Positions 1,505 through 42,280 of a stretch of 64,000 nt of DNA are shown here, in pieces. This stretch comes from Mustelus asterias (Eukaryota): assembly GCF_964213995.1 (NCBI RefSeq), contig NC_135823.1, positions 1,240,001 through 1,304,000 of the forward strand. Direction: 5' to 3'. The notes below the pieces were generated by a model, which saw only the letters and a program-made list of their open reading frames with translations, was not told the DNA's origin and ran no database searches. The position numbers and the translations under genes are program-made. The first letter of the stretch is position 1, and each line of letters begins with the position of its first letter.

Positions 1505-1657
1505 NNNNNNNNNNNNNNNNNNNNNNNNNNNNNNNNNNNNNNNNNNNNNNNNNNNNNNNNNNNNNNNNNNNNNNNNNNNNNNNNNNNNNNNNNNNNNNNN
1601 NNNNNNNNNNNNNNNNNNNNNNNNNNNNNNNNNNNNNNNNNNNNNNNNNNNNNNNNN
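1505..1657. other. Assembly gap (153 N)
   Basis: Run of N directly visible. Confidence 1.
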
Positions 1658-2717: not shown

Positions 2718-3419
2718 CAATTTATGTGACAAAATTAAATCAAGTGTGTGGACTCTACGAACCGTATTTATTTTTCAGTACAGCGCAGAGGAAAAAATAA
2801 TTTTCACCGTTTCCTAGTACATGTGACAAAAATAAATCAAATAAATTCAAATTAACACAAATCTTATTCTCCCCAATCTCCTGAATTCTCCTTTGCATTT
2901 ATTGGTCCCTACCTTAAACAGGTGGCCAATTCATTTGAAATCGTACATGTGTCCTTTCAACAATTTCATATTTGTAACCTCTATTTCCTTTCAAGCCTCA
3001 AGCTTCAATTCTTTAAGAGAAAAGGGTTTCAGCCTATTCAATATTCACTGATCGTTAGGAGCTATCAGTTCTGCTGTACCAGTTCTGAAGTATTTAGAGT
3101 AACGTTCCTGTTGTCTCTTTATCCTTACCAGGTTTTGAAGAACCGTGCTTTGTTCTCCAAGTCTGGCCTAACTGCTCTGCGTCGATAGCTGTGGTATTTT
3201 GAAAAACATGCTGAGTGTGTACCAGCACTCTGACATTTAGTAAACAGGAAAACAGCAGAGAGCTGTCTGCCTCGGTTCCATTTTTCAACCGCAATCGCGT
3301 ATTTATTAATAAACACAACGCAGAAATTTCACACCTCCCTCACACAGAGGGAACAAGAGCGAGTTTTCATGTGAGATTCGCATCGGGGGCTCAGAGTCTC
3401 ACCATCTGGGTCAAGGACA

Positions 3420-3462
3420 ATGAGTTTGCTCGGTGTCTGTGCATCGTTCCATCTCTTCCAAG
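3420..3462 (+). CDS. Gene A exon 1, signal peptide (MSLLGVCASFHLFQ)
   Basis: ACAATG start, hydrophobic 14 codons plus 1 nt, strong donor AG|GTGAGA; phase 1 matches the V exon. Confidence 0.75.
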
Positions 3463-6400
3463 GTGAGAGATCCTCATACATTCAGATAGAGTGGAGTAGA
3501 ATTTACAGTTGCTAAGTAGCAATCAACAGTTTCCAATGCCAGTTTCGTCGATAACTACAGAAAAACAGGTGGAAGATGATCGGTACTTGTAAGGAGTGAG
3601 ATACCGAACGCGTTTATTTTTAATGCAGCGAGTTCTTGTGATCTTGACGGTGCTGTCTGAAAGGGCGGTGGAAGCAGATTCTATCGTAACTTTCAAAAGA
3701 GGGGAGTTGGAGAAATGCGACAAGGGGCCAGCATTAGCTGTGATATCAGTGGGTAAAAGGAGGGTGAGTGGCCAATTGGATAAGTCTTTCAAAGCTCCAA
3801 CACTGACACGAACGCCCGAATGGTCTACCTCCCAGCTGTGCAGAGCTGGGAGATGAAACACATCATGCAAGCTTCACTTAACAACAAATGTTTTAAACTT
3901 ATTTATTCGTGTCACAAGTAGGCTGCCATTAACTCCGCAACGCAGTGGAAAATGTAATGTATCTAACAATGACCTGACTGGAAATTAAAGAGAATTGTCA
4001 TATCATTGTCATAAAATATGTGAGTTTGCTTCATTTACACCATTGGCGACTGGGGGAGCGGGGTGGGTGCTGTTGTGTTTCAACTGAAATTAGAAAGACT
4101 TGAAAAAGAGTCAAGAGCCCAAAGTCAGCAGGGAAAAGTTGAAACAAACGTTGGATGAGAGAAAATAACATTAAATTCTGAAGAAGTCCTTCAATATATT
4201 TAACCCTCACAGTTCCCAGTTGTCCACTCCAATGCATACACTAGATTTCCTGATCAAGAAACTCAGATTGGACACAGAAGAAAAGAACACAACCAACACA
4301 ATAATCGGCGCGATTTGAAGTGTTCCTGTGCTGGACACCTCGTTTTTTGTCGTTGTTTCTAGATTTGTTATGCCCCTATATCGGCATTTGTTTGCCGGGG
4401 GATGTTTTCAGGTAGTGCAGGACAATTTGTGGTGACTCTTGTTTTTTCTCTCTCTCCTTCTCAGTCATAGTGTCTCATACTACGTTGTCCCAGTGTCCAC
4501 CGGTACAGACACTTCCGGAGGGGAGCAGTGTTAAACTGAACTGCCACATCCCGGGCTCAGGAGCTGCTATGGTCTATTGGTACATGCAATCAGAGCGAAA
4601 CAAAATAAAATTGGTTGACAGACATGGCATTTACCTCCAGGAAGGCGAAAGCTTTGCAAGTAAGAATTCTGAAAAAGTGGGAATTTATTCATTGCTGATT
4701 ACGGATGCACGGAGAAACGATTCTGGGATGTATTATTGTGCAATCCGCAATCTCAAAAAGAGGTCACTAATATTCGGAAATGGATCCAAGTTAGTAATTG
4801 CAGGTACATTTTATCATTCTTCCATTGAAGTGGACATTTCAACAGCAATTAAAACGAGTCGTGTTCTACCTGTTAATGGGTTCTCTGTTTGTTTTGCCGG
4901 ATTTAGCGGATTCTCCAACCATATTCCTCCTCACCCCGCCGCTGCATCAGATTCGCGCCATGGAAAGGGTCCCGTTGTTCTGTTTGGTCAGAGGATTGTC
5001 TCCCGATTCCATTTCCGTCCGCTGGAATGTTTCTGGGCGGGATACTGTGGGACTGACCGATTCAGGGGCAATGGAACCGGGCGGCACCGACACCGTCAGG
5101 AGTTACATCAGCCTCCCGGTGGAAACTTGGAGCAGCGGCGCTCGCTGTACTTGCGCCGTTCAAGTCATCTCCAGTGAAAGTATTTTCAGTGAAAGTGTCT
5201 CATGTCAGAGAGGTAGCTATTCACAATGACCCCTTCACATCCATCTATTTAATGCTAATGTCACACTTTACGCAGAGGTGCCTAATTTTATAACATGTCT
5301 CTTCTCCCATGTGTTTCGACGTAAATCCAATTCAACTTTGACCTATCACAGTGCTCTCGTTCAGTTCGCTGAAAAGTTAATCTTCCCTCTTCCAGAGAGC
5401 TGTTCATGTTCAGCCACTGAGACACTTATTTCTGGCACAGATGGATGTCGAGATATAGGGAAAACGCCGGAAGGAAACGTTTATGTTGAAAATTAGCCAT
5501 CATGTTATATAATACCAGAGCAGCCTCGAAAATGGACTGGCTTCTTCCTGCTCCTATTTCCTGTGTCCATATGTCTGGCTCCACCGTGTTGACATGGTTT
5601 GATTTATTATTTTCACATGTAATGGGATACAGTGAAAAGTTTTGATCCATGCACGTTACAAAGACATGCATACCATTGATCGAGTACATGGATTTGATTT
5701 ATTATTGCCATATGTATTTGGGATTGCGCTGTCCAGAAAAAGCATAACGCTCATAGAGTACATAGTTTTGATCTATTGTTGTCATATGTTTCCAGATACA
5801 GTGAAAAGCATTGTTTCATGCGTGCGATACAAAAAAAGCACACCATCATAGGGTACATAGATTTGATTTAATTCTATTTTATTGCTGCCACATTTATTGG
5901 GATACATTGGTAAGTATATTTCCTTGCGTTATACAGACAAAACATACCGTTCACAGAGTACTTAGTTTTGATTTATTACTCTCACATATATTGGGATAGA
6001 GTGAGATGTATTGTTTCTTGCACGCTACACAGGCAAAACATACCATTTATATAGTACATGTGGGAGAAAGAAAGGAACGGGTGCAGCATGTAATACTACA
6101 TGCGTAAATGGAAGATTACGAGACAGTATAAGAGAGTTAGAATTAAGTTTTAAAAGAATAGCACGAAAGCCAATGACAGAATTGGTGGGTATGCTTGGGA
6201 CAGCTCGCAAGAAACAGCCATGCTCCGGCGCCATTTTGAATATGGTTGGGAGTCAGTAGCCCATGTCGCCGTGGGTTGAAATGAAATGTGTGATGACATT
6301 TCTATCGTATAACTTTATCACATCATGCCTACATGTAATGATTTATCCGACCTATCGTCTCCCTACTTCGAACTATTACAGTTTAAAAAAGCGGCACATG

Positions 6401-6640
6401 CTATCTGATGGATCTGTCCACCTGCTTAACTTAGCGTTATTCATTATCTCTCTCCCTCTGTTAATCGGTTCATTTTGTTTCTGTATAATAATCCGCTATC
6501 TCAGTCAGCTAGCCAACTCTCTGCATCTCACTCCCTCTCTTTTTCTCTTTTCGCTCCATTTCCCTATTCTCTCTGTGTTGCCCAGTATTAAACTCTCTGT
6601 GTCTCCCCGATCCACCCGACCCCTCCGCCTCCACACCACC

Positions 6641-6671
<31 letters not shown>

Positions 6672-8456
6672 CCAAACTACCCCAACCCCGGCCCCTCTTT
6701 TCTTCTTTATTCATTCCTGGGACATGCGCGTCGCTGGCTGACCAGCATTTATTGCCTAGTTGACATAGGGCCGTTATGTGTCAACCACGTTCTCTCTTAT
6801 CTCTCTGTCGCCAGCTATTGATTTTTCTCTCAGTCTGTGTTTATTGATATCTGTAATATTCTCACTCTTGCCTGATTTGTCCAGTTAAACAATGCTCCAT
6901 TTAAATAGCCACCTATCTGTCTCAATGGATTCCTACGTCGTCGACTCACTTTTTATATATTTGTCCTTACCTTGCTCCTTCCAGCTGTTCCCTTATGTAT
7001 ATCCAAGTGAAACAATTCTGTATGATCTATCTGCTCTATCACTCTCTTTGATCTCGGGATTACTCCTGTCAAATTTACCTATCACTTTCTTTCTCTCTCA
7101 CTGAACGATGATCTTTCGATTTTTGCTCTCTCTCAGTCGCATTCCCTCACTCTGTCTCTCGTTGTCTCTCCCCAGTGTCCTGTTGAAAAAATGTTCGGCA
7201 ACTTTTCTGCTCCATTACATGACGGCACAATATACAAAACCAGTTATTATTTTCGGGGAAATGGACAGGCAGTTTTAATCAAATTGTTCACTCATTTATG
7301 TTTTCCACAATTCTCATTGGAGGTGAAATGTATTCTTCTGTTTCAGATATTCCGGTAACCACGTCGTGCATTGTCTCGCTTTCAGGGGGTTTGTTGGCCG
7401 CGGCGCTCCTCCTTCTGGGATTGGTCTTTGTGGCTGGGAGATGGAGCTGCAGGAATCGGCAGAGAAGTAGCGATTGTTCAGAGACACTCTCACCCCGCGG
7501 CATCCACAATCACACATTTATCACTGAATTATTGAGACTATGGACGAATTGTGTGAAATGTGGCCAATTAGTCCGACTTTCTTCTTCTTAAACAGGCAAT
7601 GCAAGACATGATGAGGCCCTGACCGCTTCCAGATCATACCAACAGAATGAAGAGGTACGTTGTATTTTCCATTTTGCGTGGTTATTTTTCGATACCTTTT
7701 CACCCAAGGTTCAAAATTCGTAATGAGCACATTGCTCCGGAAAAAAAAATAACTCTGCAACTCTGGCAGCATCTGTGGAGACGGGAATATTTCGAGCCCT
7801 TGGGATACTTCTTCAGACCTAAGTTAAATCATTGGCCGCATTCTGCAGCCCATCCCGCTGGCGGGATTTTCTGGTCCCGTCGTAAGCAACGCACCCCTGC
7901 CCGTTCCCCCTCCCTCCAAAGCAACGGCATGCGGCCCGTTGTTGAACTTTGTGTCAACCTGGTTTCCCGTCATTTACCCCACTCCACCGCGGGGGAACTC
8001 GCGGACGTGTTTTTTGACGTCGGTGGCACTGGAGGATGCAGCCGTGGCTGGGGGCGGGTGGCGGGGCGGGGGCGGGGGGTGCAGCGGACCGCCGGGGATG
8101 TCCCGCCAAGTAAGCAGAATATTATCTTGGGAGTCATTGTGTCCATTTAGGAAGTTGATTTTTCACACAATGGGAGTCCAATTTTGGAACTCTCTCCCCG
8201 GAAAAAAAAACTGTTCAGGGCAGTTAACAGTTGGAATTTGCAAAACTGAGATGGATAGATTTATATTCGGGAGAATATTGAGGAATATTCAAAAATTGCT
8301 CAAAAACATGTCAGCCTTCATCTCGTTGAATAGAGTGGAGGGACTCTATGGCCTCACCTATCCCTATAATGATGGTGTGGAGTACATTGACAGATCACTT
8401 TTCATCCACAGTCTGTTTATGCTCGCCTGGCCTTCAATGAGGATCCAACACGCTAA
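3420..8456 (+). CDS. Gene A: non-rearranging VJ-C1-TM-ITIM Ig-superfamily receptor (PRARP/VJC1-like), join(3420..3462,4465..4803,4907..5212,7347..7466,7596..7654,8412..8456), 303 aa
   Basis: Six exons with GT-AG boundaries and consistent phases (1,1,1,1,0) splice into one open frame of 912 nt ending in TAA. Domain order is signal peptide, V with J motif, C1, TM, ITIM. AATAAA at 8749-8754. Confidence 0.85.
4465..4803 (+). CDS. Gene A exon 2, V-set domain with germline-joined J segment
   Basis: Polypyrimidine tract plus CAG acceptor. VKLNC (B-strand Cys), VYWYMQ, DSGMYYC and the J motif FGNGSKLVI are in one exon. Donor G|GTACAT; no RSS between V and J. Confidence 0.95.
4907..5212 (+). CDS. Gene A exon 3, C1-set domain
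   Basis: PTIFLL..VPLFCLVRGLSP..VRWNVSG..YISLPVETWSSGARCTCAV is a C1-set pattern. In-frame TAG acceptor at 4904-4906; donor G|GTAGCT. Confidence 0.9.
5598..6060 (-). repeat. About 5 tandem copies (~75-105 bp) of a LINE 3'-tail sequence in intron 3 of gene A
   Basis: Unit TTTGATTTATTATT..CACATGTATTGGGATACAGTGAAAAG..CATACCGTTCATAGAGTACAT is repeated. The same tail occurs singly at ~2270-2365, ~49865-49970, ~52705-52830 and ~59130-59220. Confidence 0.75.
7347..7466 (+). CDS. Gene A exon 4, stalk with Cys plus transmembrane helix
   Basis: TTTCAG acceptor; DIPVTTSCIVSLSGGLLAAALLLLGLVFVAGRWSCRNRQR; no charged residue in the TM. The donor AA|GTAGCG is weak, so the end is less certain. Confidence 0.8.
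7596..7654 (+). CDS. Gene A exon 5, cytoplasmic (SNARHDEALTASRSYQQNEE)
   Basis: CTTTCTTCTTCTTAAACAG acceptor, GAG|GTACGT donor, phase 1 to 0. Confidence 0.75.
8412..8456 (+). CDS. Gene A exon 6, ITIM-bearing terminal exon (SVYARLAFNEDPTR*)
   Basis: TTTTCATCCACAG acceptor, phase 0; SVYARL matches the ITIM consensus (S/I/V/L)xYxx(I/V/L). Confidence 0.8.
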   Translation, partial: SVYARLAFNEDPTR

Positions 8457-8748
8457 CTCGAGAGGAAAGAGAGTGAACGAAAAAGAGAGAAATGTGTGTT
8501 TCCTCCATATCTAGTGTTGTAGAAACATTTCTTTTGTGCACGGTCAATTTTGAAGGTCCAACTGGAGCAAATTCGTGCGGAGTGGCAGCTCAATGCTCTG
8601 ATGGCGCCCAAAGCGGAAAATGCACTCACCCTAATGTCCGCCATTCTACAATGGAATATCGACTGCAGCGCAATTTCACCTCTTCATGCTTCTAATTCCT
8701 TATATCGTTTTTTACAATGCTATTCTGCATTGTCTCCGGTAAATATGC

Positions 8749-8754
8749 AATAAA
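8749..8754 (+). terminator. Candidate polyadenylation signal of gene A
   Basis: AATAAA about 290 nt after the stop codon. Confidence 0.6.
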
Positions 8755-10370
8755 CAATTCAAAATGTATCTGTATACGCGTTACCAATTTGTCGAAACAG
8801 GTTTTGAATACCAATGTAAGCTGCATGACCCCAGATTCTATATGGGTTCAACCCAAATGCGTTTCCGGTGGCTCTTCAGCTAATTAACAAAGGCATTTTT
8901 GGAGTGAATGTGTGTGCGTTTGGAATTGGGTAAAGAACCGACGAGGTAGTTTAGTATTTCGTTGGGGATTCTCGCTGGATTGATTAAAAATGCAGAGTGA
9001 GAGCATTCTTGAACTCGATGTGCAGTGGTAATGAACACAATTACATTTATTGCTGAGACAAAATTATTTCCAATCCATTTTGGCTTTGGATAACATCGCT
9101 CAGTGGATTTTACAGAATCGGACAAGAGAACCTTACCCATGTACAGCACAGGAAGAGCCTGCCCCTTATCTGTCGGCTGTTTAAATCTGTATGTTTGTTC
9201 CACATCCTATCTACCACAGCATGACAATTAGGCATATTCCTCTTTTAACAGCGATTAAAATTATCAGCGATTAAAATTACTTTTCTTTCCTCCTGTACAT
9301 GCCAATAGCAGCAGACCATTGAGCACTTCGGTGAGTTAATTTCCGCCACGCTGGAACAATATCTTAACTCCATTCACGCAGCTCCATGCATAATTCTATC
9401 CAGTTACCAAAAGACAATCTCTGTTTTGACAGTTTCATTTTAGCCACGGTCTCAGCAGTTATTTGAAGTTCATAGTTACAGATCCCCCTTTCCATTGTTT
9501 GAAGAATTGTGAACATGTCACATCCAAATGCACAGACTCTGTTATCGAGCAACACCATATCCAACCATCCGGCCGCCACCCCCCACTACATCCACCCGAA
9601 TTGTTTTTGACTTCGCCCACTGCGACGGTACCGTGCCGTTAACAAATGTATTTTAATCATGTTGATCTGCAGGATGTCTCTAGCAGTCCCTGGCATCTTG
9701 TGGGAACTTTTGTCTACAAACGGCATCCTCCATTGTGACTGAGACATCACAATTGATAATATGTCTGTTTCAATCTGAACTAATGCAGTGATCTGTTTTT
9801 TGAGTGTTCCCTTGGGATTGCAGAGCAAATCTTGATCGGTATGATTGACAGATAAATTCATATGGCTGTGGACAACTAATCTTTCACAGAGAATTCCAAC
9901 TTCGTTGCTGTTTCCAGATGTTGTTTGGACTTGAGATAGAGCAGTGTCAGTTTTCACCCGCCTCTGGAGTTGTAGATACTGCTTTCTGAGTGTTGCTTCT
10001 TGGAAGCTGCAGAGAGAGTGAAAGAGAGAAAGGTATCCTGTTCTGTCCCTCAGATTTGAAACCTCGAAGCTTCCAGAGACTAGATTTATTTCACTGTTTT
10101 GCTGTCTTGGGCATATATATACTTCTCTGAAAACGGCTGTTTGGATTAATTTCGATTGGTGTTGAAAGTTGGAAATCTAGTATCGCGGGAGTAAACGTGT
10201 TTTTGTGTTAACTAATTCTGAGGAAGGTTGCATGCTGATGGGAGATATGATTAAATTGGAACACCAGAGATAGATAGCTTTTGATATAACAAGGTGTGAT
10301 GTTTAATTCTTGTAATTGGTAAAAGTTAAGCCACTTCTTTTTAGTGGGTCATTTGAATCATACTCGGAGT

Positions 10371-17149: not shown

Positions 17150-19800
17150 ATGGCCGTACTGAGAGGGGATATATCCGAGGGTTCGGCCACTGAGTCTATA
17201 TGGGTAGAACTGAGAAATTTGAAGGAGAAATCACTTTGATAGGGTTGTACTAGAGGCCCCCAAATAGTCAGCGGGAAATTGAGCAGCAAATATGTAAGGA
17301 GATTACAGATCGTTCCAAGCAAAATAGGGTGGTAATAGACGGAGATTTTAACTTTCCCAACATTGACTGGGACAGCCATAGTATTAGAGGGTTGGATGGA
17401 AAGAAATTTGTTTAATGTATTTAGGAGGCGTTTCTCATTCAGTATGTCAATGGCCCGACGAGAGAGGGGGCAAAACTTGACCTCCTCTTGGGAAATAAGG
17501 AAGGGCAGGTGACAGAAGTGTTCGTGAGGGATCATTTTGGGGCCAATAACCATAATTCTATTGGTTCTAAGATAGCTATGGAGAATGATAGGTCTGGCCC
17601 AAAAGTTAAAATTCTTAACTGGGGCAAGGCCAATTTTGATGGTATCAGGCAGGAACTTTCAAAAGTTAATTGGGGGAATCGGTGGGAAGGCAAAGGGACG
17701 TCTGGTAAGTGGCACGCTTTCAAAGGTGTGTTAACCACAGTTCAGGGTAAACACATTCCTTTTAGAGTGAAGGGAAAGGCTGCCAGAAGTAGGGCAAGGC
17801 TGGCAGAAACAGGGAACCCTGCATGATTCTGGATATGTGAAGGCCTGGTCAAGAAAAAGAAAGAGGCAGATGACATGCATATGCATCTGGGATCAAGTGA
17901 ATGCCTTGAAGAGTATAGGGGGTGCAGGAGTAGAGTTAAGAGAGAAATCAGGAGGGCAAAAAGTGGTCATGAGATTGTTTTGGCAGATAAGGCAAAGTAG
18001 AATCCAAAGAGCTTCTATAAATGCATAATGGACTTAACAGTAACAATGGCGAGAGTAGGGCCAATTAAAGATCACCAAGGTCATCTATGTGCGGATCAAC
18101 AAGAGATGGGTGAGACCCTAAATTAATATTTCTCATCAGTATTCACTGTTAAGAAAAGCATGGATGTTAGGGAACTTGAAGAAATAAATAGTGATGTCTT
18201 GACGAGTGTACATATACAGAGAAGGATATGCTGGAAGTCTTAAAGCTCTTGAAGGTAGATAAATCCCCGGGACCTGCTGAAGTGTATCCCAGGACATTGT
18301 GGGAGGCTAGGGAGGAAATTGCGTGCTCCCGAGCCAAGATGTTTGAATCTTCGATAGTCATGGGTGAGGTGCCTGAAGATTGGAGAGTGGCAAATGTTGT
18401 GCCTATTTTAAAAAGGGCTGCAGGGAAAAGCGTGGGAACTACAGTCCAGTGAGCCTCACATCTGTGGTGGGTAAATTGTTGGAAGAAATTTTGAAAGACA
18501 GGATCTACAGGCAATTCGAGATGCAAGGACTGATTAGGGACAGTCAGCATGGCTTTGTGTTTGGAAAATCATGTCTCACAAATTTGATTGAACTTTTTGA
18601 AGAGGTAACCAAGAAGGTAGAAATCGGCAGTGCCATTGGTGTTGTCGACATGGACTTTAATAAGGCCTTTGGCAAGGTAGCACATGGTAGGTTGTTGCAT
18701 CAGGTTAAATCTCAGGGCATCCAGGGTGAGGTATCTAAATGGATGCAAAATTGGCTCCTTGACAGAAGCCAGAAGGTGGTTGCAGAGATTTGGTTTTCAA
18801 ACTGGTGGCCTGTGGACAGCGGAGTGCTTCAGGGATCAGTGCTGGCTCCACTGTTATTTGACATTTATATACATGATTTGAATGAGAACACAGGAGGCAT
18901 GGTTAGTAAGTTTGCAGATGACACTAAGATTGGCGGCATAGTGGACAGTGAACAAAGTTATCTCCAATTGCAACGGGATCTTGATCAATGGGGCCAGTGG
19001 GCTGACGAACGGCAGATGGAGTTTAATTTAGACAAATGCAAATTGATGCATTTTGATAGATTGAACCAGGACAGGACATACTCAGTTTTTGGTAGGGCGT
19101 TGGAGAGAGTTCCAGAACAAAGAGACCTCGGGGGACATGTTCATTGCTCCTTGAAAGTGGAGTCACAGTTGGACAAAATGGTGAAGAAGGCATTCGACAT
19201 GCTTGGTTTCATCGGTCAGCACATTGAATACAGGAGTTGGAATGTCTTGTTGAAGTTGTACAAGACATTGGTAAGGCCAGACTTGGAATACTGTGTGCAG
19301 TTCTGGTCACCCTGTTGTAGAAAGGATATTATTAAACTAGAAAGAGTGCAGAAAAGATTTACTAGAATGCTACCGGGACATTATGGATTGAGTTATAAAG
19401 AGATGCTGGATAGCCTGGGACTTTTTTCTCTGAAGCGTTGGAAGGCTGAGGGGTGATCTTATAGAGGTCTATAAAATAATGAGGGGCACGGATCAGTGAG
19501 ATCGTGAATATCTTTTCCCAACGGTAGGGGAGTCTAAAACTAGAGGGCATTGGTTTAAGGTGAGAGGGGAGAGATACAAAAGTGTCCAGAGGGTAATTGT
19601 TTTTCACACAGAGGGTGGTGAGTATCTGGAACAAGCTGCCAGAAGTAGTAGTAGAGGCGGGTACAATTTTGTCTTTTATAAAGCATTTCGATAGTTACAT
19701 GGGTACGATGGGTATGGAGGGATATGGGCCAAATGCGGGCAATTGGGCTTAGCTTCGGGGTTTAAAAAAATTAGGGCGGCATGGACAATTTGGGCCTGTA
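17150..19800 (+). mobile_element. 5'-truncated CR1/HER1-type LINE (APE end, RT, 3' UTR)
   Basis: ORF 18380-19456 has NYSPVSLTSVVGK, QHGF, QGSVLAPLLF and FADD; upstream endonuclease remnants. Confidence 0.92.
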
Positions 19801-24500: not shown

Positions 24501-26025
24501 TTCACTGGTAAGGCAAGGCATTTTGAGGCCAATTGCCACACATGTGAACTCACCGCTCTGGCCGGTGAGGAAGCCAGATAATTACTGGAGGGCCACAGTG
24601 GACTACAGAGTCCTTAATAAGAATATTCCGGCATGCGCCCCAACGGTAGCAGCCGTGGCGGACCTGTTAGGAGCAATTCCAGCGTCAGCCTCTGTTTTTA
24701 CAGTGCTGGATATTTCGAATGAGTTTTGGTCAATCCCAGTCAGGCGGGAGGACCAGTATAAGTTTGCCTTCACGTTTAAGGGGCAGCAGTATACATGGAG
24801 CTGTCTCCCACAGGGTTTCCACAACAGCCCCAGCATTTTTCACCAGTACATGGCCGAATGCCTGTAAGAGTTTAGTGAGCCCCACAGACTGGTCCAGTAT
24901 GTGGACGATATACTACTGTTCAGAGACAGTAGCGAGGATCATGGCCCCCTGGTAGACGAGTTGTTGAGGTTACTCCGTAAGGGAGGGTTAAAAGTTAACC
25001 CCAAGAAAGCCCAACTCGGGTTGAGGGAGGTCAAGTTCCAGGGTTTAACCCTTAGGGCTGGGAAGAGAGGGATAGATGCGGCCAGGAGACAGGCAGTGCA
25101 GGAACTCCCAGTCCCGGTAGACGTTAGGGGGGTACGATCCTTTTTGGGAGTCACAGGCTATTGCCGTGACTTCATTGAAGATTACGCCGCGACTGCAGTG
25201 CCTCTGCTCAGGCTGCTGCACAAGGGGGTGGAATGGGAGTGGGACAGCAAGTGCGAGTCGGCATTCGTCCGACTCAAGGAGGACTTGCAAAAGGCCCCAG
25301 CTCTGGAAACCATTGACCCCTGGGAGGAATTTTTCCTGGAGGTAGCAGCCGGCAGTGATAGCCTGACCGCTGTACTCCTCCAAGAACGGCATGGCAAGTT
25401 GAGGCCGATGGTGTATTCCTCCCGAGTTCTCACAGAAGTGGAGCGGGCATACTCCAACTGTGAACGGCACCTGCTAACCACACACTGGGCGGTGAAGCGG
25501 GTGCAGGTTTTTACTAGAATGGCGCCCATCACCCTCCTGACCCATCACACCCCAACCCAAATGTTGTTAAACGGCCGGATTAAAGATGGCACGGTCAGTT
25601 GGGCCAGGATCACCCGGTGGACTCTCTTGTTGTCCCAAATGGCGCTACGGGTGAAGGGGCTGAGTGAGCCACAGCTCGCAGCCAACCTGGTGTACCCAGG
25701 GGAGCCACACCATTGTTCCGTAGAGGGGGTATGGGAGGTAGGTTTTGGTTTTCGGGCAGGGCTGTATCCCACGGGTAGGGGGATATACGTAGACGGATCC
25801 AGTTCCGTATCGGGGGGCATCAGATTCATGGGTTGTGGGATCTGGGACCCCGAAGCTGAAATAGCCCTGGCCCTCAAGCTCCCCCACACACAGAGCGCTC
25901 AGCAGGCAGAGCTGGCTGCAGTGATGCATGTGGTCACACATCCGGAGGGTTTCCCCATTCCATACACCATCTGCTCGGACAGCATGTTTACGTGAAACTC
26001 GTGCGCGGAGTATCTGGCCATCTGG

Positions 26026-26548: not shown

Positions 26549-29500
26549 TGAGGAACAGGGAGAGAGTGCAGTTAAACATGTGGTTGCAGGGGTGGTGTAG
26601 GAGGGAGGGTTTCAGATACGCGGATAATTGGAACACATTCTGGGGAAGGTGGGACCTGTACAAACAGGACGGGGTGCACCTGAACCAGAGGGGCACCAAT
26701 ATCCTAGGAGGGAAATTTGTTATGGCTCTTCAGGGGGGTTTAAACTAAATTGTCAGAGGAGTGGGAAAAGGAGTTGTAGTCCGGAGGTCAGTGAGGATGG
26801 TGAGGTATTGGAGAAGGTATCAGGGTCAAGGGTGGGTACCGGTAGACAGGAAGGTGGGTTGAAGTGTGTCTACTTCAATGCAAGGAGCATCCGGAACAAG
26901 GTAGATGAACTTGGGGCGTGGATTGGTACTTGGGACTACGATGTTGTGGCCATTACGGAGACGTGGGTAGAACAAGGACAGGAATGGTTGTTGGACGTTC
27001 CGGGGTATAGATGTTTCACTAAGTGTAGGGAAGCTGGTAAAAGAGGTGGAGGAGTGGCATTGTTAATCAAGGATAGTTTAACGGCTGCGGAAACGCACTT
27101 CGAGGGGGATCTGCACACTGAGGTAATATGGGCTGAGGTAAGAAATAGGAAAGGAGCGGGCACGTTGTTAGGAGTTTACTATAGGCCCCTAAATAGTAAT
27201 AGAGATGTGGATGAAGAAATTTCTAAGCAGATTATGGACATGTGTGGGGGTCACAGGGTAGTTGTCATGGGGGACTTTAACTATCCAAATATTGATTGGA
27301 GCCTTTGTAGGTCAAATAGTTCGGATGGGGCAGTTTTTGTGCAGTGTGCGCAGAAGGGTTTCCTGACACAATATGTGGATAGGCCGACAAGAGGTGAGGC
27401 CACATTGGATTTGGTACTGGGAAATGAACCGGGCCAAGTGTTAGATTTGGTTGTGGGAGAGCACTTTGGAGATAGTGACCACAATTCGGTGTCTTTTTTT
27501 ATTGCAATGGAGAGGGATAGGGCCGTACGGCAGGGCAAGGTTTACAATTGGGGGAGAGGTAATTATGATGCGATTAGGCCAGAATTAGGGGGCATAAGTT
27601 GGGAACAGAAACTGTCAGAGAAAGGAACTAATGAAAAGTGGAACCTTTTCAAGGAACAAATACTGGATGTCCGTAATAGGTATGACCCTGTCAGGCAGGG
27701 AAGAAATGGCCGAGTGAGGGAACCTTGGTTCATGAAAGAGGTGGAATGTCTTGTGAAAAGGAAGAGGGAAGCTTATGTAGGGATGAGGAAACAAGGTTCA
27801 GATGGCTCGATTGAGGGTTACAAGTTAGCAAGGAATGAGCTGAAAAAGGGGCTTAGGAGAGATAGGAGGGGACACGAGAAGTCCTTGGGGGGTCGGATCA
27901 AGGAAAACCCCATGGCCTTTTACTCTTATGTGAGGAATAAAAGAATGACCAGGGTGAGGTTAGGGCCGGTCAAGGACAGTAGTGGGAACTTGTGTATGGA
28001 GTCAGTAGAGATAGGCGAGGTGATGAATGAATACTTTTCTTCACTGTTCACCAAGGAGAGGGGCCATGATTTTGAGGAAGAGAAGGTGTTACAGGCTAAT
28101 AGGCTGGAGGAAATAGATGTTCGGAAGGAGGATGTCCTGGCAGTTTTGAATAAACTGAAGGTCGATAAGTCCCCTGGGCCTGATGAAATGTATCCTAGGA
28201 TTCTTTGGGAGGCAAGGGATGAGATTGCAGAGCCTTTGGCTTTGATCTTTGGGTTCTCGCTGTCCACGGGGATGGTGCCAGAGGACTGGAGAACGGTGAA
28301 TGTTGTTCCTCTGTTTAAGAAGGGGAATAGAAATGACCCTGGTAATTACAGACCGGTTAGTCTTACTTCGGTGGTTGGTAAATTGATGGAAAAGATCCTT
28401 AGAGATGGGATTTACGACCATTTCGAAAGATGCGGATTAATCCGGGATAGTCAGCACGGATTCGTGAAGGGCAAGTCGTGCCTCACAAATTTGATAGAAT
28501 TTTTTGAGGAGGTAACTAAGTGTGTTGATGAAGGTAGGGCAGTTGATGTCATATACATGGATTTTAGTAAGGCGTTTGAGAAGGTCCCCCATGACCGGCT
28601 TATGATGAAACTGAGGAGGTGTGGGATAGAGGGAAAGTTGGCCGATTGGATAGGTAACTGGCTGTCTGATCGAAGACAGAGGGTGGTGTTCGATGGAAAT
28701 TTTTCGGATTGGAGGCAGGTTGCTAGCGGAGTGCCGCAGGTCCTCTGCTCTTTGTGATTTTTTTTAATGACTTAGAGGAGGGGGAGGAAGGGTGGATCAG
28801 TAAATTTGCTGATGATACCAAGATTGGTGGAGTAGTGGATGAGGAGGAGGGCTGTTGTAGGCTGCAAAGAGACATAGATAGGATGCAAAGCTGGGCTGAA
28901 AAATGGCAAATGGAGTTTAACCCTGATAAATGTGAGGTGATTCATTTTGGTAGGACTAATTTAAATGTGGATTACAGGGTCAAAGGTAGGGTTCTGAAGA
29001 CTGTGGAGGAACAGAGAGATCTTGGGGTTCATATCCACAGATCTCTCAAGGTTGCCACTCAAGTGGATAGAGCTGTGAAGAAGGCCTATAGTGTGTTAGC
29101 TTTTATTAAGAGGGGGTTGGAGTTTAAGAGCCGTGGTGTTATGCTGCAATTGTACAGGACCTTGTTGAGACCACATTTGGAATATTGTGTGTAGTTCTGG
29201 TCACCTCACTATAAGAAGGATGTGGAAGCGCTGGAAAGAGTGCAGAGGAGATTGACCAGGATGCTGCCTGGTTTGGAGGGTAGGTCTTATGAGGAAAGGT
29301 TGAGGGAGCTAGGGCTGTTCTCTCTGGAGCGGAGGAGGCTGAGGGGAGACTTAATAGAGGTTTATAAAATGATGAAGGGGATAGATACAGTGAACGTTCA
29401 AAGTCTATTTCCTCGGGTGGATGGAGCTATTACAAGGGGGCATAACTATAGGGTTCGTGGTGGGAGATACAGGAAGGATATCCGAGGTAGGTCCTTTACG

Positions 29501-31440: not shown

Positions 31441-33156
31441 CTAGCTGGCTAGGTGCTAAAACCTTGAACAATATGCAATCCCAACGGCAGAATATAATTT
31501 GAACCAGTTACGGTTGCATGTTATCGGAACATCATACAAGCCTTGAATTTCATATTATTATCATGTTATTTCGAACGAACTGGCAACACAAGTTCCAACA
31601 ATTCATGGTGTTCGATGGTTAGCAAATAATGCAGAGCAAAAATACTCAAGGACAACATCTGTATTAGCAACTGAGGTTTTAAGTGATTAATCTCTGCTGT
31701 ATCTTGGAGTAATCAGAACGACGATTCATTTCACTAATTTGATATAAATTAAATTGACTCATCGACAGTATAATCACCTCATGCTTTGTTCCTGCTTTTC
31801 TATCATTTTCGCAAAATTACTTATTTTTAACTTCTCGACTGCACGAGTATAATTTCAACTTCAAGACAAGGAAAGAGCCCATGGTCCTTCCAAGGTCTAA
31901 CTCCTTTCTTAACATTAAAGCAGTGAAGCGAACAAGAACAAAATATTCACGCAACCACTTTTTTTAACACACAAATACACATGGAAGCTTCCAACATTTA
32001 TTTAGGCATAACATCTTAAACTGGGATGAAAGCAAAACGTTTGAGAATACAGAACGTTGATTAACAGTCGGTTTTATTCTGCTGTCTTCCAAACTGTAAT
32101 TAAACTCAAAACGGAAGTAAATTCAAGAAATCTTCTCACTTTGATCGCTAACAGTTTGAACCAAACCCTTCCTCGGCATTTTCTTATCTCATCAATTATT
32201 TCCCTACTCTCTAATTATATTGATTTGTCAATTTAGGATTATAGGCGGGCACTCCCTTTTAGCCCGCCTGGCATTTAATACGCTTCCATTTCATGGCTGA
32301 TTCACTCCTTTGCGTATCCATGTAACACATTTTACTTCGAATGAATTCTGACGGTATAATAGTTCCCATAATTACACATGCACTCCCATTCTAACTTATG
32401 TAACTCCCTTCTCTGTTAAATTTTGACTTTATGTCTTGACCTATCCTGTCCAGAACAGGATGGATTAGTTCTCTGCTTGTTTCAGCAGAGAGGCGGAGGG
32501 GTACGTTCAATCAGATGAACATAAACAAGTGATTAATCATCACTTCAAATACGCAGGAATAATTATTTCCATTTATCTTTTCAGTTTCAGTTCTATCAAG
32601 AATACCTTTTCAAATTTAATAAAAAGCCTGATCCAAATAATCCCTTCATTTTTATCACGTTTAAATATCCCTACTAAATTAAGACATTTACACTTTCTTA
32701 CAGCATCTCCGGTTTAAGCTCAAAATGTGCATAATTAATTATTAATATCCTTGTAACCAACACAGGCAGATACAGGATCGAATCCACTGTGTGCTTAAAT
32801 GGTAACTCTCCTTACGACTCTTCAGGTGTAATGTAATGCTAATTTTTCCACATTCCCCGAAACTCTGTCCGATGCACTATCGTAAAATTTCAACTGGGCA
32901 AAGTAATTTATTAAAACTCACACTCAGAGCAAACAACTGACTTTGATCTGCCATACCCTATGCCACCACACGAGGCTCTCGATCGCACACTTTCACCTCT
33001 CTCTCTCTCTCTTTTCCTTTGTCAAGAGAGAGAGAGAAACTTACAACCTGCTGGTGTTTAAGCCTTTACTATCACGCTTCAAACTAACCTTTTGAGCCTG
33101 ATTTGAGTCCCTTCTGTCTTTGCAGCAGTGCCGGCGCTGGTGTCTGTCATATCATA

Positions 33157-36360: not shown

Positions 36361-36929
36361 GCATGGGATTCTTTGGGATCTCCCAAGCAAGGGACGTCTT
36401 GCACCTTATTCCGAAAACCAGCAATGTTTTGCACAGTATTAAAATATTTGCAAAGAACTTACTTGCACTGCACTGTCTTGTGTTATCTTTCCATATGTTT
36501 GGCGATAGCGGCCTGTGTTTAAAAAAGGGAAAATGCCAATTTAAATCAGATCCTGTTCTTACTAAGCTATAATTAATTTGAGGTACAATGCACCAATGAT
36601 GCCCTCTTGCACCTATGACCCCAATACGTTAATTGGCCCCACAGTGTGTCAATCCAAAGAGGGCTCCCACATATACTAGCGTTTTCCTAATACATAAACG
36701 GACCCTCAATAAATCAACTCTCAAACAATATTTCAATGGATCGCAATTCGCCAATGGATGGACCAGGAATATTTACACCGCATGGCGTCAATGCCAATCT
36801 GGTAGTTCGCTGCCAGAATTGTTAGTCAACAATTATGCTTTATTATTGGACCAACAGAGAGAATATTTGAGGATTTTTCTAATGGCGGGAAGTACACGCA
36901 TCAATCAATTAATTTATCCCATTTTAGCA

Positions 36930-37520
36930 TTGCTTAGCACTGCTGCTTCACAAAGCCACAGAGCCGGGTTAAATTCCGGCATCGGGCCGCTGTCAGTGCA
37001 GAGTTTGCGTGAGTTGTCTCTGAGTGCTCTGGTTTAATCCCAGGGTCCAACGATTTGCAGTTTGGGTGGATTGGCCATGCTCAATTTCTCCATATTTTTC
37101 AAAGATATCCAGGGTAAGCTAATTGTCCATGTTAAATTGTTCCTTCGTGTCCAAAGATGTGTCCATTCGGTGGATTGTTCATGGTAAATTTTCCCTTAGT
37201 GTCCGAAGATGTGCAGGTCATGGGCATTTGCCGAGCTGAATTTTCCCGTCATGTCCTAAAATGTGCAGGTCAGGTGGATCATCCACGCTATTTTGCCACT
37301 TAGTGTCCAAAGATGTGTAGGGAGGTGGATTTGACATACGAAATTGCTCCTTAGTGTCCGAAGATGTGCAGGTTCGGTGGATTGGCCATGCTGAATTGCC
37401 CCTTCGTGTCAGCGGGATGAGAAAGGCAAATGTGTGGAGTTACCCGGATCATGCCGAGGTGAGATTATTGTCGGTGTAGTCCCGATGTGTTGACTGGCCT
37501 CCTTGTGCATTGTAGGGATT
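36930..37520 (+). mobile_element. Old HE1-like SINE with about 7 internal tandem copies of a ~52 bp unit (37044-37407)
   Basis: Repeated GTGTCCAAAGATGTGCAGG..GGTGGATTGGCCATGCTAAATTGCCCCTTA variants between SINE head and tail. Confidence 0.8.
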
Positions 37521-37972
37521 CTTTGAAACGTCTGTTCAATGATATTGAATCTCTGCCAACATTTGAATGCAACTTACCGGTTTGTCTCTCATTGTGATCC
37601 ATTCTGTGCGTTGTCTGGATCAAGCTCAAACTAGAGAAGGAAATGAAAACGATTAAACAACTGTTCCGTGCAACAAATCCTGGCCAAAGTGCCAGAAATA
37701 TTTGAAATAGAATACTCAATTTCAAAATATGGAATATTTCGACGTATACCATTGGAATCAATGACTGTATTGAACCGTGCGTAACACAGTATGAAATGGA
37801 CAGAGAGTTTTCGTGATGAATTTGGAAATGGCTCATTTACTTATATTTCATTGTGGGCTCCCTTTGCTCGCTCTCCTGAAACAAAACTTTATGGTCAGCA
37901 ACGCAAAACTACAAGGGGAATCGCATTGGATGAACAAAAATGATATTATCCCTCCTGATCATTATTACTCAC

Positions 37973-38074
37973 CTGATCTGCCGCTCTTCCAAATCCAAAT
38001 ATAAAGAAGGACCCAGAGGACAATCGGGATCACCAGGACAGTTATGACAATTGGATGTTCCAGATTGCACAATC
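37973..38074 (-). CDS. Gene B stalk-Cys plus TM exon
   Basis: 102 nt, phase 1-1, open frame, about 22 hydrophobic residues, TCTCTATAG acceptor and AG|GTGAGT donor. Confidence 0.85.
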
Positions 38075-38159
38075 CTATAGAGAGTAAACACTTAGAAACT
38101 GCTGCTGGATCAAATAATGTTTTCTGGATTTCGAAGATAGGAAACTGAACCCAGACACT

Positions 38160-40817: not shown

Positions 40818-42280
40818 CAAACTCTTGGTCCAGTGTCCCCCTGGAATTCCCAGTTGAACAATGCAAGTACAAAGAGTGCCGCTTCTCCAAGTGTCCCCCG
40901 ACACCATGACATGACTTCTGATGCTGTAGGTTCCGTCCTCATCCATTATTCCGGGATCACGAGATCCTTCAGTGACCAGGCCAGAAATATTCCAGAAAAT
41001 AGCAATCTGGTTGGGGGAATCTCCACTGACGAAACACACTAAGGGCACGTTATCATTCAAATCCAGCTCACCCGGTAGCACAAATAACAGCACAGCCGTC
41101 TTATTTTTGGAAATGACTCGACAGAGACTGGGATACAGTTAACGATTAATTTACACGGAAATGGTAATGCTGTGCACAATCTGAATAAATTTATTTTGCC
41201 CTCTTACCTCCAACCAATAGTGTGGGCCCGTTCTGGAGCGGTCCATACCCAGCTTTATATGTACAGTGGTAGGAACCCGAGTCATTCGTCTGTACATTAC
41301 GAATTTTCAGAGTCAATACATTACCCGGATTGTTTTTTTTCAGAAATAAACTTACAGTCGGCCCCACCACTGTACCGGGGCTTCACCCAGACGCTGCTTG
41401 CACCAAGCAGAGTTAAACACCAAATCCACTTCATAAGTGTTATGACAGGATGATTCCACCGTCTGGCCTACTTCAGCTGTTATTGTGAAGGGGATTTGAG
41501 ACAGGTAGGCCGCAGATTCTGGAACGAGAGAGATTGTTGTTACATTACAACTGAGTGCTGTAATATCTGAAGCCACCCTTGACAAAAACCTCGCCTGTAA
41601 TTGAAGTCTAAAGTTTATTTATTATTCGCACAAGTAGGCTTACATTGACACTCCGAAGACGTTACTGTGAAAAATCCGCCAGTCAGCACAATCCGGTGCC
41701 TGTTCGGGGACACTGAGGAAGAATTTAACATGGCCCATGCACCTAACCAGCATACCTTTCGGACTCTGGGAGGAAACCGGAGCAGCCAGAGGAAATGCAT
41801 GCAGAAAAGGGGAAGGATGTGCAAACTCCACACAAATAGTGTTCCCAGCCGGGAATCGAACTTGTGACGCTGGCGCTGTGAGACAGACATGCTAACCATT
41901 GTTCCACCATGCCATTCAATTCCATTAATATTTGTAATCATTGTTGGTTACGTTTATTCTTTACTTTATTTCTTCTCATTTTTACAGGTGAAAACATTAA
42001 TAAATTGATATGATCAGGTCAAATTCCTTCATCTCAACACTGGTTCACGTTTTCAGCTCAGAAAATTTAAATGCTGGTTTATAAAAGTGAATCCGCTTAA
42101 AATTCACATCGGCCTCTCACTTACAGTGAAGCCGCAGTACTTGAAATACGATTATCAGAGAAAAAGATTATTTGACCATGTTGGTATAATTTCCCTTGTA
42201 TTCTGTCTGACTGCGTAGCTTCTGCAGACTGCACGCTGACCTGATCTGAGTCCTATTGATTTGGGGCTTTTCAGATTCGG

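What the first reader, a model, noticed from the sequence alone, without database searches (positions are those of the whole stretch)
3420..8456. Gene A looks like a TCR chain outside and an inhibitory receptor inside
Seen: the J motif FGNGSKLVI is fused to V in one exon, with a basic CDR3-like loop (AIRNLKKRSLI) and no RSS. The stalk has a Cys, the TM has no Lys/Arg, and the tail ends in SVYARL. Established: TCR chains need charged TM residues to assemble with CD3 and have very short tails; ITIMs recruit SHP-1/SHP-2/SHIP. Inference: a fixed-specificity inhibitory receptor, perhaps for an acidic or MHC-like ligand. The six-exon model is invisible in the ORF track.
Basis: partly seen in the sequence, partly recalled or inferred. 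Interest (0 to 1): 0.85.

Follow-up and report, generated by a model that had tools for sequence, protein, structure and literature searches.

The report
Shark germline antigen-receptor-like inhibitory receptor gene
This is a real, intact shark gene for a cell-surface protein that looks like an antibody or T-cell-receptor chain outside and carries an inhibitory-type signal inside, and it belongs to a large, unnamed gene family found across sharks and rays rather than being a one-off.

Summary
Gene A (3420-8456, + strand) is an intact six-exon gene. It has a split leader, a single-exon V domain ending in FGNGSKLVI with no RSS, and one C1-set domain. It also has a stalk Cys, an uncharged TM and a roughly 44-residue tail ending in SVYARL. 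All introns are GT-AG.

It is not unique. I examined 43 database proteins from 18 elasmobranch species. They share this architecture and carry only automatic names ("uncharacterized", "Ig kappa/lambda light chain-like"). Callorhinchus has the VJ exon type. Frogs have colinear V-C1-TM-ITIM proteins.

The ectodomain is antigen-receptor-like in general, not TCR-specific:
- The C domain and the V+C profile match Ig chains best by sequence.
- Fold search ties TCR and Ig light chains.
- The nearest V domains outside the family include teleost NITRs.

Across the family the conserved tail core is YAxL. Only 2 of 43 relatives have gene A's canonical ITIM. So inhibitory signalling is plausible but inferred. 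The basic CDR3 is peculiar to gene A.

No RNA data exist for this species. First-stage notes report the same kind of gene elsewhere in this genome; I did not check them. The likely published counterpart (chicken PRARP) could not be read or compared.

Verdict: new member of a known kind, moderate interest.

The parts
3420..3462 (+). Exon 1: start codon and most of a split leader (MSLLGVCASFHLFQ), phase-1 donor AAG|gtgaga
   Evidence: The leader resembles those of database homologues, e.g. Heterodontus P0157 MSLLGVCALSHLIQ.
4465..4803 (+). Exon 2: end of the leader plus a V domain with the J segment fused in one exon (339 nt, phase 1 to 1). No RSS.
   Evidence: V-set 1e-13; no heptamer; contiguous in DNA contigs
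4737..4769 (+). CDR3-equivalent loop AIRNLKKRSLI between YYC and FGNG. Four basic residues, not conserved in relatives.
4770..4796 (+). J motif FGNGSKLVI (FGxG beta-bulge). It contains an N-G-S sequon.
   Evidence: FGxG[ST] is present in 38 of 43 family proteins
4907..5212 (+). Exon 3: one C1-set constant domain (306 nt, phase 1 to 1). A gene-A-specific Cys lies at 5203-5205.
   Evidence: (C1-set 5.9e-8)
7347..7466 (+). Exon 4: stalk with the family-invariant Cys (7367-7369), an uncharged TM helix (7370-7438) and a basic stop-transfer stretch RWSCRNRQR. At 120 nt, skipping it would stay in frame.
   Evidence: Cys invariant in 27 of 27 aligned full-length relatives
7596..7654 (+). Exon 5: membrane-proximal part of the cytoplasmic tail (NARHDEALTASRSYQQNEE), 59 nt, phase 1 to 0
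   Evidence: 53-56% identity to the Mustelus relatives
8412..8456 (+). Exon 6: SVYARLAFNEDPTR and stop. The canonical ITIM SVYARL is at 8412-8429.
   Evidence: (13 of 13 identical to P0005)
8749..8754 (+). First AATAAA after the stop codon: candidate polyadenylation signal
   Evidence: Position only, no RNA support.
40851..41516 (-). Gene B: a degenerate paralogue in the same cluster. The V exon has an in-frame stop and a decayed J (GPLQNGPTLLV). The C1 exon is 42% identical to gene A's and 50% to Heterodontus P0157.

Best explanation
Gene A is an intact copy of a multigene family, spread across cartilaginous fish, of germline-fixed antigen-receptor-like type I membrane proteins. Each has a split leader, a single-exon V-J domain, one C1 domain, a membrane-proximal Cys, an uncharged transmembrane helix, and a short tail that ends in a conserved E-x-x-Y-A-x-L-A-F motif. 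Shown here: the gene structure, the domain families, the absence of RSS, family membership, and the conservation pattern (V loops variable; J, C1, stalk Cys and the tail tyrosine conserved). Inferred: the chain forms a disulfide-linked dimer through the stalk Cys, either with itself or with a chain of the second old lineage. It binds a ligand through the CDR-equivalent loops. Diversity comes from many germline copies, not from rearrangement. After tyrosine phosphorylation of SVYARL it recruits SH2 phosphatases (SHP-1, SHP-2 or SHIP) and damps activation of the cell that carries it. It therefore works like NITR-, KIR- or SIRP-type inhibitory receptors, but on an Ig/TCR-type V-C1 scaffold.
For: Gene model and motifs.

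Family: the V exon finds single-stretch hits of 36-64% identity, 185-412 aa long, in elasmobranch and chimaera records. Their sequences show the same V-J, C1, Cys, TM and tail order. A family profile finds 32 elasmobranch proteins at E of 6e-50 or better.

Conservation: the stalk Cys is invariant, and Y, A and L of the tail motif are at least 90% conserved in 27 full-length members. YAxL is present in 34 of 43; the 9 without it lack the C-terminal motif and include N- or C-terminally incomplete models.

Gradient to the nearest relatives (Mustelus P0162, P0005): V 55-58%, C 71-77%, TM 71-85%, last exon 83-100%.

Column entropy: CDR1 2.65, CDR3 2.18, CDR2 1.97, against FR 1.16-1.63 and J 0.76.

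The AlphaFold model of P0162 has confident V and C domains and a TM helix. It matches TCR and Ig light chains at E about 1e-17.

Frog proteins P0184-P0186 are colinear, including a C-terminal IVYTEL or IVYSQL.
Against: - No transcript evidence for this species. Both runs that hold the stretch are DNA.
- Nothing was tested biochemically: phosphorylation, SHP binding, dimerisation, ligand and expressing cell type are all unknown.
- The strict ITIM consensus is met by gene A and by only 2 of 43 relatives. 23 have Thr at -2 and 9 batoid proteins have Asp at -2. So what selection keeps is YAxL, which also fits a YxxPhi sorting signal.
- Gene A has two Cys that the family lacks (4494-4496 and 5203-5205). 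It sits beside a decayed paralogue and retroelements.
- None of the 43 database proteins examined has a charged TM, so a classic paired activating partner was not seen. A first-stage note claims one 310 kb away; I did not check it.
Confidence: 0.68

Rival explanations
1. The conserved C-terminal tyrosine motif is mainly a YxxPhi sorting or endocytosis signal. The protein is then an internalising or scavenging receptor, or a recycling one, and not a phosphatase-recruiting inhibitory receptor.
For: Across the family only Y-A-x-L is kept (34 of 43). The -2 position that defines an ITIM is S in 2, T in 23 and D in 9. The motif lies at the extreme C-terminus after an acidic stretch.
Against: Gene A itself has a canonical ITIM. 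Upstream acidic residues (E-E or E-T before Y) fit tyrosine-kinase substrates, which I recall from general knowledge. Motifs of the xxYAxL type are the classic ITIMs of KIR, LAIR and SIRP alpha (also recalled). Frog relatives carry canonical IVYTEL and IVYSQL. The two functions do not exclude each other.
Confidence: 0.15
2. Gene A is a silent or decaying copy in a birth-and-death cluster. It looks intact but is not used in this species.
For: No RNA run holds it. The neighbouring gene B is broken. LINE and LTR retroelement ORFs fill the space between them. High-copy repeats sit in its introns (depth bins 3588-3923, 5604-6107, 6612-6779). It has two family-atypical Cys.
Against: All six exons are open with correct phases and GT-AG sites. 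The tail exon is 13 of 13 identical to a Mustelus protein, and the conservation gradient is that of a constrained gene. The lack of RNA runs reflects what data exist, not silence.
Confidence: 0.1
3. It is a true TCR or Ig chain gene that was joined in the germline by RAG, as shark light-chain clusters are. It still serves as an antigen-receptor chain.
For: V-J fused in one exon with a separate C1 exon and a split leader, as in germline-joined shark IgL genes (PMC12227049, section 15 passage). The V exon's best PDB hits are TCR alpha and delta V domains. The automatic names are Ig or TCR chain-like.
Against: The TM has no charged residue. The tail is about 44 residues with an ITIM, not a short TCR tail or a secreted light-chain end. 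The family forms its own groups across sharks, rays and a chimaera. In one search, the only non-elasmobranch listed at E of 1e-5 or better was a frog V-C1-TM protein. An origin from a joined Ig/TCR gene long ago is not excluded.
Confidence: 0.04

Closest known systems
[quoted passage not shown] 2019, J Immunol 202:1992; chicken and other vertebrates)
   Same: As I recall the paper: non-rearranging V-J exon, one C domain, TM, an inhibitory-type tail, linked gene pairs, and dimers. The only text I saw is its title in a reference list and the phrase 'VJ genes in the MHC (e.g. NKp30 and PRARP)' in PMC10751288. Frog proteins P0184-P0186 share the whole layout with the shark family and may be PRARP-type genes.
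   Different: Membership is untested. The paper is not held and no PRARP sequence was available to compare. Identity between the shark family and the frog proteins is only 26-33%. MHC linkage of this cluster is unknown. Here the family is large, with several copies per species.
Teleost novel immune-type receptors (NITRs)
   Same: Germline-diversified multigene family, V domain with a J motif (FGNGT), and mostly ITIM tails (PMC2442602, abstract start seen in the listing). NITR-type teleost proteins lead the non-family proteins I had fetched, by best single domain (31-41 bits). One cluster is named 'immune-type receptor 24' of Sphoeroides.
   Different: NITRs have a second V/I-type domain or none, not a C1 domain (sequences). 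They are bony-fish genes. V identity is only about 30-37%.
UrIg and UrIg2 (elasmobranch non-rearranging antibodies; PMC12227049, sections 4 and 7 read)
   Same: Single-exon VJ with split leader, C1-type constant domains, non-rearranging, elasmobranch, and automatically annotated as Ig chains. UrIg2 (PDB 9dmx) scores 59.9 bits in three stretches against the gene A C exon.
   Different: UrIg has three C domains and is secreted. UrIg2 has nine to eleven C domains. That paper has no occurrence of 'ITIM' or 'inhibitory'. Gene A has one C1 and an ITIM tail.
TCR alpha/beta/gamma/delta chains
   Same: V-J plus C1 plus connecting-peptide Cys plus TM. TCR V domains are the best PDB hits of the V exon. 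TCR chains tie for the best fold matches.
   Different: No RSS or rearrangement, no charged TM residue, a long ITIM tail, and a C domain closer to Ig C domains by sequence.
SIRP alpha and other ITIM-bearing IgSF receptors (KIR, LAIR-1, lamprey TCR-like, hagfish APAR)
   Same: V domain with a J-like strand, C1 domains (SIRP), an uncharged TM and xxYAxL-type ITIMs. A SIRP cluster is among the Atlas neighbours (rank 6, score 0.96). The motif sequences of these receptors, and the lamprey and hagfish genes, are recalled and not checked here.
   Different: SIRP alpha has two C1 domains and four tyrosine motifs. KIR and LAIR lack V-J and C1. The agnathan genes lack C1 as far as I recall. None was compared by sequence here.

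Membership tests
T-cell receptor chain | V and J as separate segments flanked by RSS, joined somatically | tested here: not met
   V and J lie in one exon. No heptamer in 4365-4903 and no heptamer plus nonamer in the window. The exon is contiguous in DNA contigs.
T-cell receptor chain | Charged residue(s) in the TM for CD3 assembly, and a very short cytoplasmic tail | tested here: not met
   TM IVSLSGGLLAAALLLLGLVFVAG has no charge. The tail is about 44 residues over three exons.
T-cell receptor chain | Constant domain orthologous to a TCR C domain | tested here: inconclusive
   By sequence, the 60 best PDB hits of the C exon are Ig constant-region chains plus UrIg2. No TCR-named chain is among the top 60 for the family profile. 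By fold, TCR and Ig light chains tie. No joint tree with shark TCR C domains could be built.
ITIM-bearing inhibitory IgSF receptor (functional class) | Type I membrane protein with an uncharged TM and (S/I/V/L)xYxx(I/V/L) in the tail | tested here: met
   SVYARL at 8412-8429. Uncharged TM. Among relatives the strict consensus holds in only 2 of 43.
ITIM-bearing inhibitory IgSF receptor (functional class) | Phosphotyrosine-dependent recruitment of SHP-1, SHP-2 or SHIP | not testable with these tools
   Needs biochemistry.
Elasmobranch VJ-C1-TM-YAxL family (unnamed; automatic names only) | Split leader, single-exon VJ with FGxG, one C1 domain, stalk Cys, uncharged TM, C-terminal YAxL | tested here: met
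   Every exon of gene A aligns to the matching part of P0162 and P0005. Gene A groups with Mustelus, Cetorhinus and Carcharodon members in both the V tree (100/99) and the C tree (98/97).
PRARP | Sequence orthology to chicken PRARP-A or PRARP-B, and their genomic linkage | not testable with these tools
   Paper not held. No PRARP sequence reached by any search. Only architecture-level likeness through the frog proteins.
UrIg / UrIg2 | VJ followed by three (UrIg) or nine or more (UrIg2) C1 domains; UrIg is secreted | tested here: not met
   One C1 exon between VJ and TM. No further Ig-like exon in 5213-7346 (tblastn).
NITR | V (plus V/I) ectodomain without a C1 domain; bony fish | tested here: not met
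   C1-set domain present. The NITR sequences fetched lack it.

The most novel reading that the evidence does not exclude
The family is the cartilaginous-fish branch of an ancient lineage of non-rearranging V-J-C1 receptors that predates or parallels the RAG invasion. It would be the counterpart of PRARP and of the frog V-C1-TM-ITIM genes. Its two old lineages coexist in the same species: the gene-A type and the 'HCHTGW' type, present together in 5 species. On this reading they pair through the invariant stalk Cys into an alpha/beta-like heterodimer, a germline-encoded 'proto-TCR' wired to inhibition instead of CD3.
Probability: 0.15. Interest if true: 0.75.

Novelty: new member of a known kind. 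Interest (0 to 1): 0.5.

Why it matters
Genes with an unsplit V-J exon next to a C1 domain are the material used to reconstruct how antibodies and T-cell receptors arose. PMC12227049 (introduction, read) calls the search for them 'of great interest'. This family would be a third type in cartilaginous fish, beside UrIg and UrIg2. It is membrane-bound, has a single C1 domain, is multi-copy, and carries an inhibitory-type tail.

If it is orthologous to PRARP and the frog genes, the V-J-C1-TM-ITIM layout dates to early jawed vertebrates. In practice, dozens of RefSeq proteins now labelled 'Ig light/heavy chain-like' or 'TCR beta chain-like' in sharks and rays would need another name. Repertoire studies should not count them as Ig or TCR loci.

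The gene itself is an ordinary member of that family. The value lies in the family, not in this copy.

Tried and rejected
RNA evidence: the look-up of sequencing runs found only two runs, both DNA-like and from one sample. Read laying could therefore confirm the DNA but not the splicing. The many 'joints' it lists at 5618-6000 lie in a high-copy intronic repeat and are not splice events.

No homologue DNA, synteny or dN/dS was possible.

Exon-only search with the search for homologous proteins is limited by length. It gave one hit (P0001).

The family-profile search scored only the 8000 candidates sharing the most words. It evidently missed Ig light chains, which score 113 bits in PDB. So its single non-elasmobranch hit says little about who is nearest.

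The frog follow-up found 3 further frog proteins but no bird, reptile or fish member and no name containing PRARP.

The Atlas search returned only automatic Ig-like names.

Literature: searches found no description of an elasmobranch VJ-C1-ITIM receptor family in the searchable library. Fu et al. 2019, Flajnik et al. 2023 and Ohta et al. 2019 are not held. Subscription journals and supplements were not visible, so 'not in print' cannot be claimed. Supplementary tables of PMC12227049 and PMC10751288, which list annotated genes of shark AgR and MHC regions, may already include these genes.

Rejected readings:
- TCR chain (see the membership test).
- UrIg2 fragment: it has one C1 and a different tail.
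- The idea that the basic CDR3 is a conserved family feature.

Exons were handled one by one. The database protein P0162 served as proxy for the structure model, so no model of gene A's own loops or its extra Cys exists.

My second notebook entry says 17 elasmobranch species. A recount gives 18.

Full report
**1. What is there**

I read 3000-9000 and translated each proposed exon by reference.

- Exon 1 (3420-3462) gives MSLLGVCASFHLFQ.
- Exon 2 (4465-4803) gives the end of the leader and a V domain. It has LNC...WY...DSGMYYC, a CDR3-equivalent AIRNLKKRSLI, and FGNGSKLVI in the same exon.
- Exon 3 (4907-5212) is a constant-type Ig domain.
- Exon 4 (7347-7466) gives a stalk with Cys, the span IVSLSGGLLAAALLLLGLVFVAG, and RWSCRNRQR.
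- Exons 5 (7596-7654) and 6 (8412-8456) give a tail that ends SVYARLAFNEDPTR.

All introns are GT-AG with pyrimidine tracts. The Ig-domain exons are phase 1 to 1, as usual for this superfamily. Pfam gives V-set (1e-13) and C1-set (5.9e-8). There is no RSS heptamer in or around the V exon. There is no heptamer plus nonamer pair anywhere in the 64 kb. An AATAAA lies 293 nt after the stop.

**2. Is the DNA real, and is it expressed?**

Two public runs hold 76-80% of the sampled words of the 5-kb stretch, introns included, so they are DNA. They are one sample and may be the source of the assembly. Their contigs carry the V-J exon in one piece. X1 has 4330-4766 and 4739-5012 with 0 differences; X2 has 4340-5016 with 3.

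The conserved parts of the V and C exons have summed depth several times that of flanking single-copy sequence. At 4736, several contigs carry a synonymous variant. Both fit paralogues elsewhere in the genome.

No RNA run exists, so splicing is inferred. The best substitute is homology. Every other exon aligns to the matching part of that protein and its paralogue.

**3. It is a family, not a singleton**

The V exon searched against 1.84 billion representatives gave many multi-domain Ig-superfamily hits. It also gave a set of single-stretch hits of 185-412 aa at 36-64% identity.

Their sequences show the same order of parts. These are a leader, V with FGNGSKL, a C1 domain with the VPLMCLVRG...RWNVSG...SAETWRSGAVCTC pattern, a Cys just before an uncharged TM, and a tail ending in ...E-x-x-Y-A-x-L-A-F.

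Names and species come:
- Sharks: Mustelus asterias, Cetorhinus maximus, Carcharodon carcharias, Pristiophorus japonicus, Heterodontus francisci, Scyliorhinus canicula and S. torazame, Chiloscyllium plagiosum, Hemiscyllium ocellatum, Stegostoma tigrinum, Rhincodon typus.
- Batoids: Pristis pectinata, Leucoraja erinacea, Amblyraja radiata, Hypanus sabinus, Hemitrygon akajei, Mobula hypostoma and M. birostris.

That is 43 proteins from 18 species, isoforms and fragments included. All carry automatic names: 'uncharacterized', 'immunoglobulin kappa/lambda light chain-like', 'Ig heavy chain Mem5-like', 'immunoglobulin gamma-1/alpha-2 heavy chain-like', 'M1-specific T cell receptor beta chain-like'.

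Two partial Callorhinchus milii models carry the same VJ type (37% identity, FGNGSKIVIA). So at least the VJ exon type reaches the chimaeras. The Atlas lists three clusters of 280-297 aa V-set plus C1-set chordate proteins with 99, 51 and 77 members as nearest neighbours. Several species have several genes; alone lists six Hypanus and five Heterodontus entries.

First-stage notes report more such genes up to 730 kb upstream on the same piece of this genome and on other pieces. I could not check them.

**4. Where gene A sits in the family**

Its nearest relatives are two Mustelus asterias proteins:
- P0162: V 55%, C 77%, TM exon 71%, last exon 83%.
- P0005: V 58%, C 71%, TM exon 85%, last exon 100%.

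No protein is close enough to come from the same species.

In trees of the V and C domains, gene A groups with Mustelus, Cetorhinus and Carcharodon members (C 98/97, V 100/99). A second lineage is marked by HCHTGW in CDR1. It contains both sharks and batoids (C 97/92, V 100/98). It coexists with gene-A-type or batoid 'DIYAQL'-type genes in Mustelus, Cetorhinus, Hypanus, Mobula and Leucoraja. That duplication therefore predates the shark-ray split. Deeper branching is unresolved (56/77), and the trees are unrooted in effect.

Across 37 V domains, the CDR-equivalent loops are the most variable columns: CDR1 2.65, CDR3 2.18 and CDR2 1.97 bits. Frameworks are 1.16-1.63 and J is 0.76.

Within some orthologue groups the CDR3 is fixed. 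AARKSNGMSFI is shared by two Scyliorhinus species and Mustelus. In gene A's group it varies (AIRNQQMGSVI, AIRNYQNRVLI, ATRSSQNMAQI), and the K-K-R run is gene A's own.

**5. TCR-like or Ig-like?**

- The V exon's best PDB hits are TCR alpha and delta V domains and pIgR domain 1, at about 31 bits per domain.
- The C exon's best hits are Ig heavy-chain C domains (IgM C-mu-4 26 bits, IgG CH3 28 bits). UrIg2 also scores 59.9 bits over three stretches.
- A profile of ten family members aligns through V and C in one stretch to a lambda light chain. It scores 83 bits in the top entry, and 113 bits for a 214-aa light chain. None of the 60 listed chains is named a TCR.
- The AlphaFold model of P0162 (27-sequence alignment, mean pLDDT 75, domains 83-94) matches chains from TCR entries and antibody light chains alike. 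E runs from 1.4e-17 to 8.2e-17 at 20-26% identity.
- Outside the family, teleost proteins of NITR layout top the best-single-domain V scores among the proteins I had fetched. One cluster is named 'immune-type receptor 24' of Sphoeroides.

So the ectodomain is a generic antigen-receptor V-J-C1 chain. 'TCR chain' is too narrow.

**6. The tail**

Gene A's SVYARL fits the ITIM consensus. In the family the constant part is Y-A-x-L (34 of 43; the other 9 lack the C-terminal motif and include incomplete models). The -2 residue is S in 2, T in 23 and D in 9, all nine from batoids. In 27 full-length members Y, A and L are at least 90% conserved and the stalk Cys is invariant.

This supports a conserved tyrosine signal and a disulfide-linked dimer. 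It leaves open whether the signal is phosphatase recruitment, an ITSM-like switch, or YxxPhi sorting.

No protein with a charged TM was among the 43.

RefSeq isoforms without the TM exon (P0036, P0177) and genes without the C1 domain (P0083, P0149) exist. Gene A's TM exon is 120 nt, so skipping it would stay in frame.

**7. Beyond cartilaginous fish**

The family profile also hit a frog protein (74 bits). Its relatives in Phyllobates, Dendrobates and Pseudophryne are V-C1-TM proteins that end in IVYTEL, IAYTEL or IVYSQL. P0184 aligns with P0162 from leader to C-terminal tyrosine, at 26% over 312 columns and E 6e-21 for the pair. The layout is therefore not confined to sharks.

I recall that Fu et al. 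2019 described chicken PRARP genes with this layout and found them in other vertebrates. The paper is not held. I saw only its citation and one sentence about it. Identity with PRARP is a lead, not a result.

**8. Context in the window**

Gene B (minus strand, V 41516-41254, C 41117-40851) is a decayed paralogue. Its V frame is interrupted, its J has decayed to GPLQNGPTLLV, and its C domain is 42% identical to gene A's and 50% to Heterodontus P0157. No other family exon was found in the window with eleven family queries. The rest of the large ORFs are LINE and LTR retroelement pieces.

**9. Mechanism and verdict**

The most likely mechanism is a disulfide-linked dimeric surface receptor. Its specificity is germline-encoded and varies from copy to copy, and its tail tyrosine delivers an inhibitory signal. 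The identity of the gene and the family is well supported. The signalling, dimer and ligand steps are inference.

The kind is known: PRARP by recall, plus NITR, SIRP, and UrIg/UrIg2 as scaffold relatives. An elasmobranch family of this exact layout was not found in the searchable literature, which excludes most subscription journals and all supplements. I rate it a new member of a known kind, of moderate interest to comparative immunologists.

The joined six-exon protein was deliberately not built or searched. All work on gene A was done exon by exon.

Noticed in passing
window 4494-4496 and 5203-5205: Gene A has two Cys where the aligned family members have Ser: LSQCPP against LSQSPP in V strand A, and SVSCQR against SVSSQR at the end of the C exon. 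They could form an extra disulfide, add an interchain bond, or be early signs of drift.
   Followed up: partly
window 4776-4784 (N-G-S inside FGNGSKLVI): The J motif carries an N-glycosylation sequon (FGNGS or FGNGT) that is conserved in most family members and in the teleost NITR-type proteins fetched. From recalled antibody structure, this residue faces the partner V domain. A glycan there would argue against a classical VH/VL-type V-V pairing.
   Followed up: no
window 36463-42179, minus strand (V 41516-41254, C 41117-40851): Gene B is a decayed paralogue. The V exon has an in-frame stop, the J motif is lost (GPLQNGPTLLV), and the C1 exon is still 50% identical to Heterodontus P0157.
   Followed up: partly
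window 32253-32288, + strand: A short match to the last exon (SLLARLAFNTLP against SVYARLAFNEDP) with the tyrosine replaced. tblastn E is 0.049, so it may be a remnant of another copy's 3' end or chance.
   Followed up: no
window 18380-19456, 24901-25995, 26628-28757, 45565-46440, 53837-54475: ORFs with reverse transcriptase, RNase H and endonuclease domains: LINE and LTR retroelement pieces between the receptor genes.
   Followed up: partly
window 3588-3923, 5604-6107, 6612-6779: Intronic stretches with summed contig depth in the thousands to tens of thousands in both DNA runs, so very high-copy repeats. The 5604-6107 block is made of tandem-like units and produces many false 'joints'.
   Followed up: no
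database proteins P0036, P0177, P0156, P0083, P0149: RefSeq models of relatives include forms without the TM exon (a possibly soluble form that keeps the tail frame), one without the V exon, and genes with V-stalk-TM-tail but no C1 domain.
   Followed up: partly
window 1505-1657: A run of 153 N, either an assembly gap or masked. I left it untouched.
   Followed up: no
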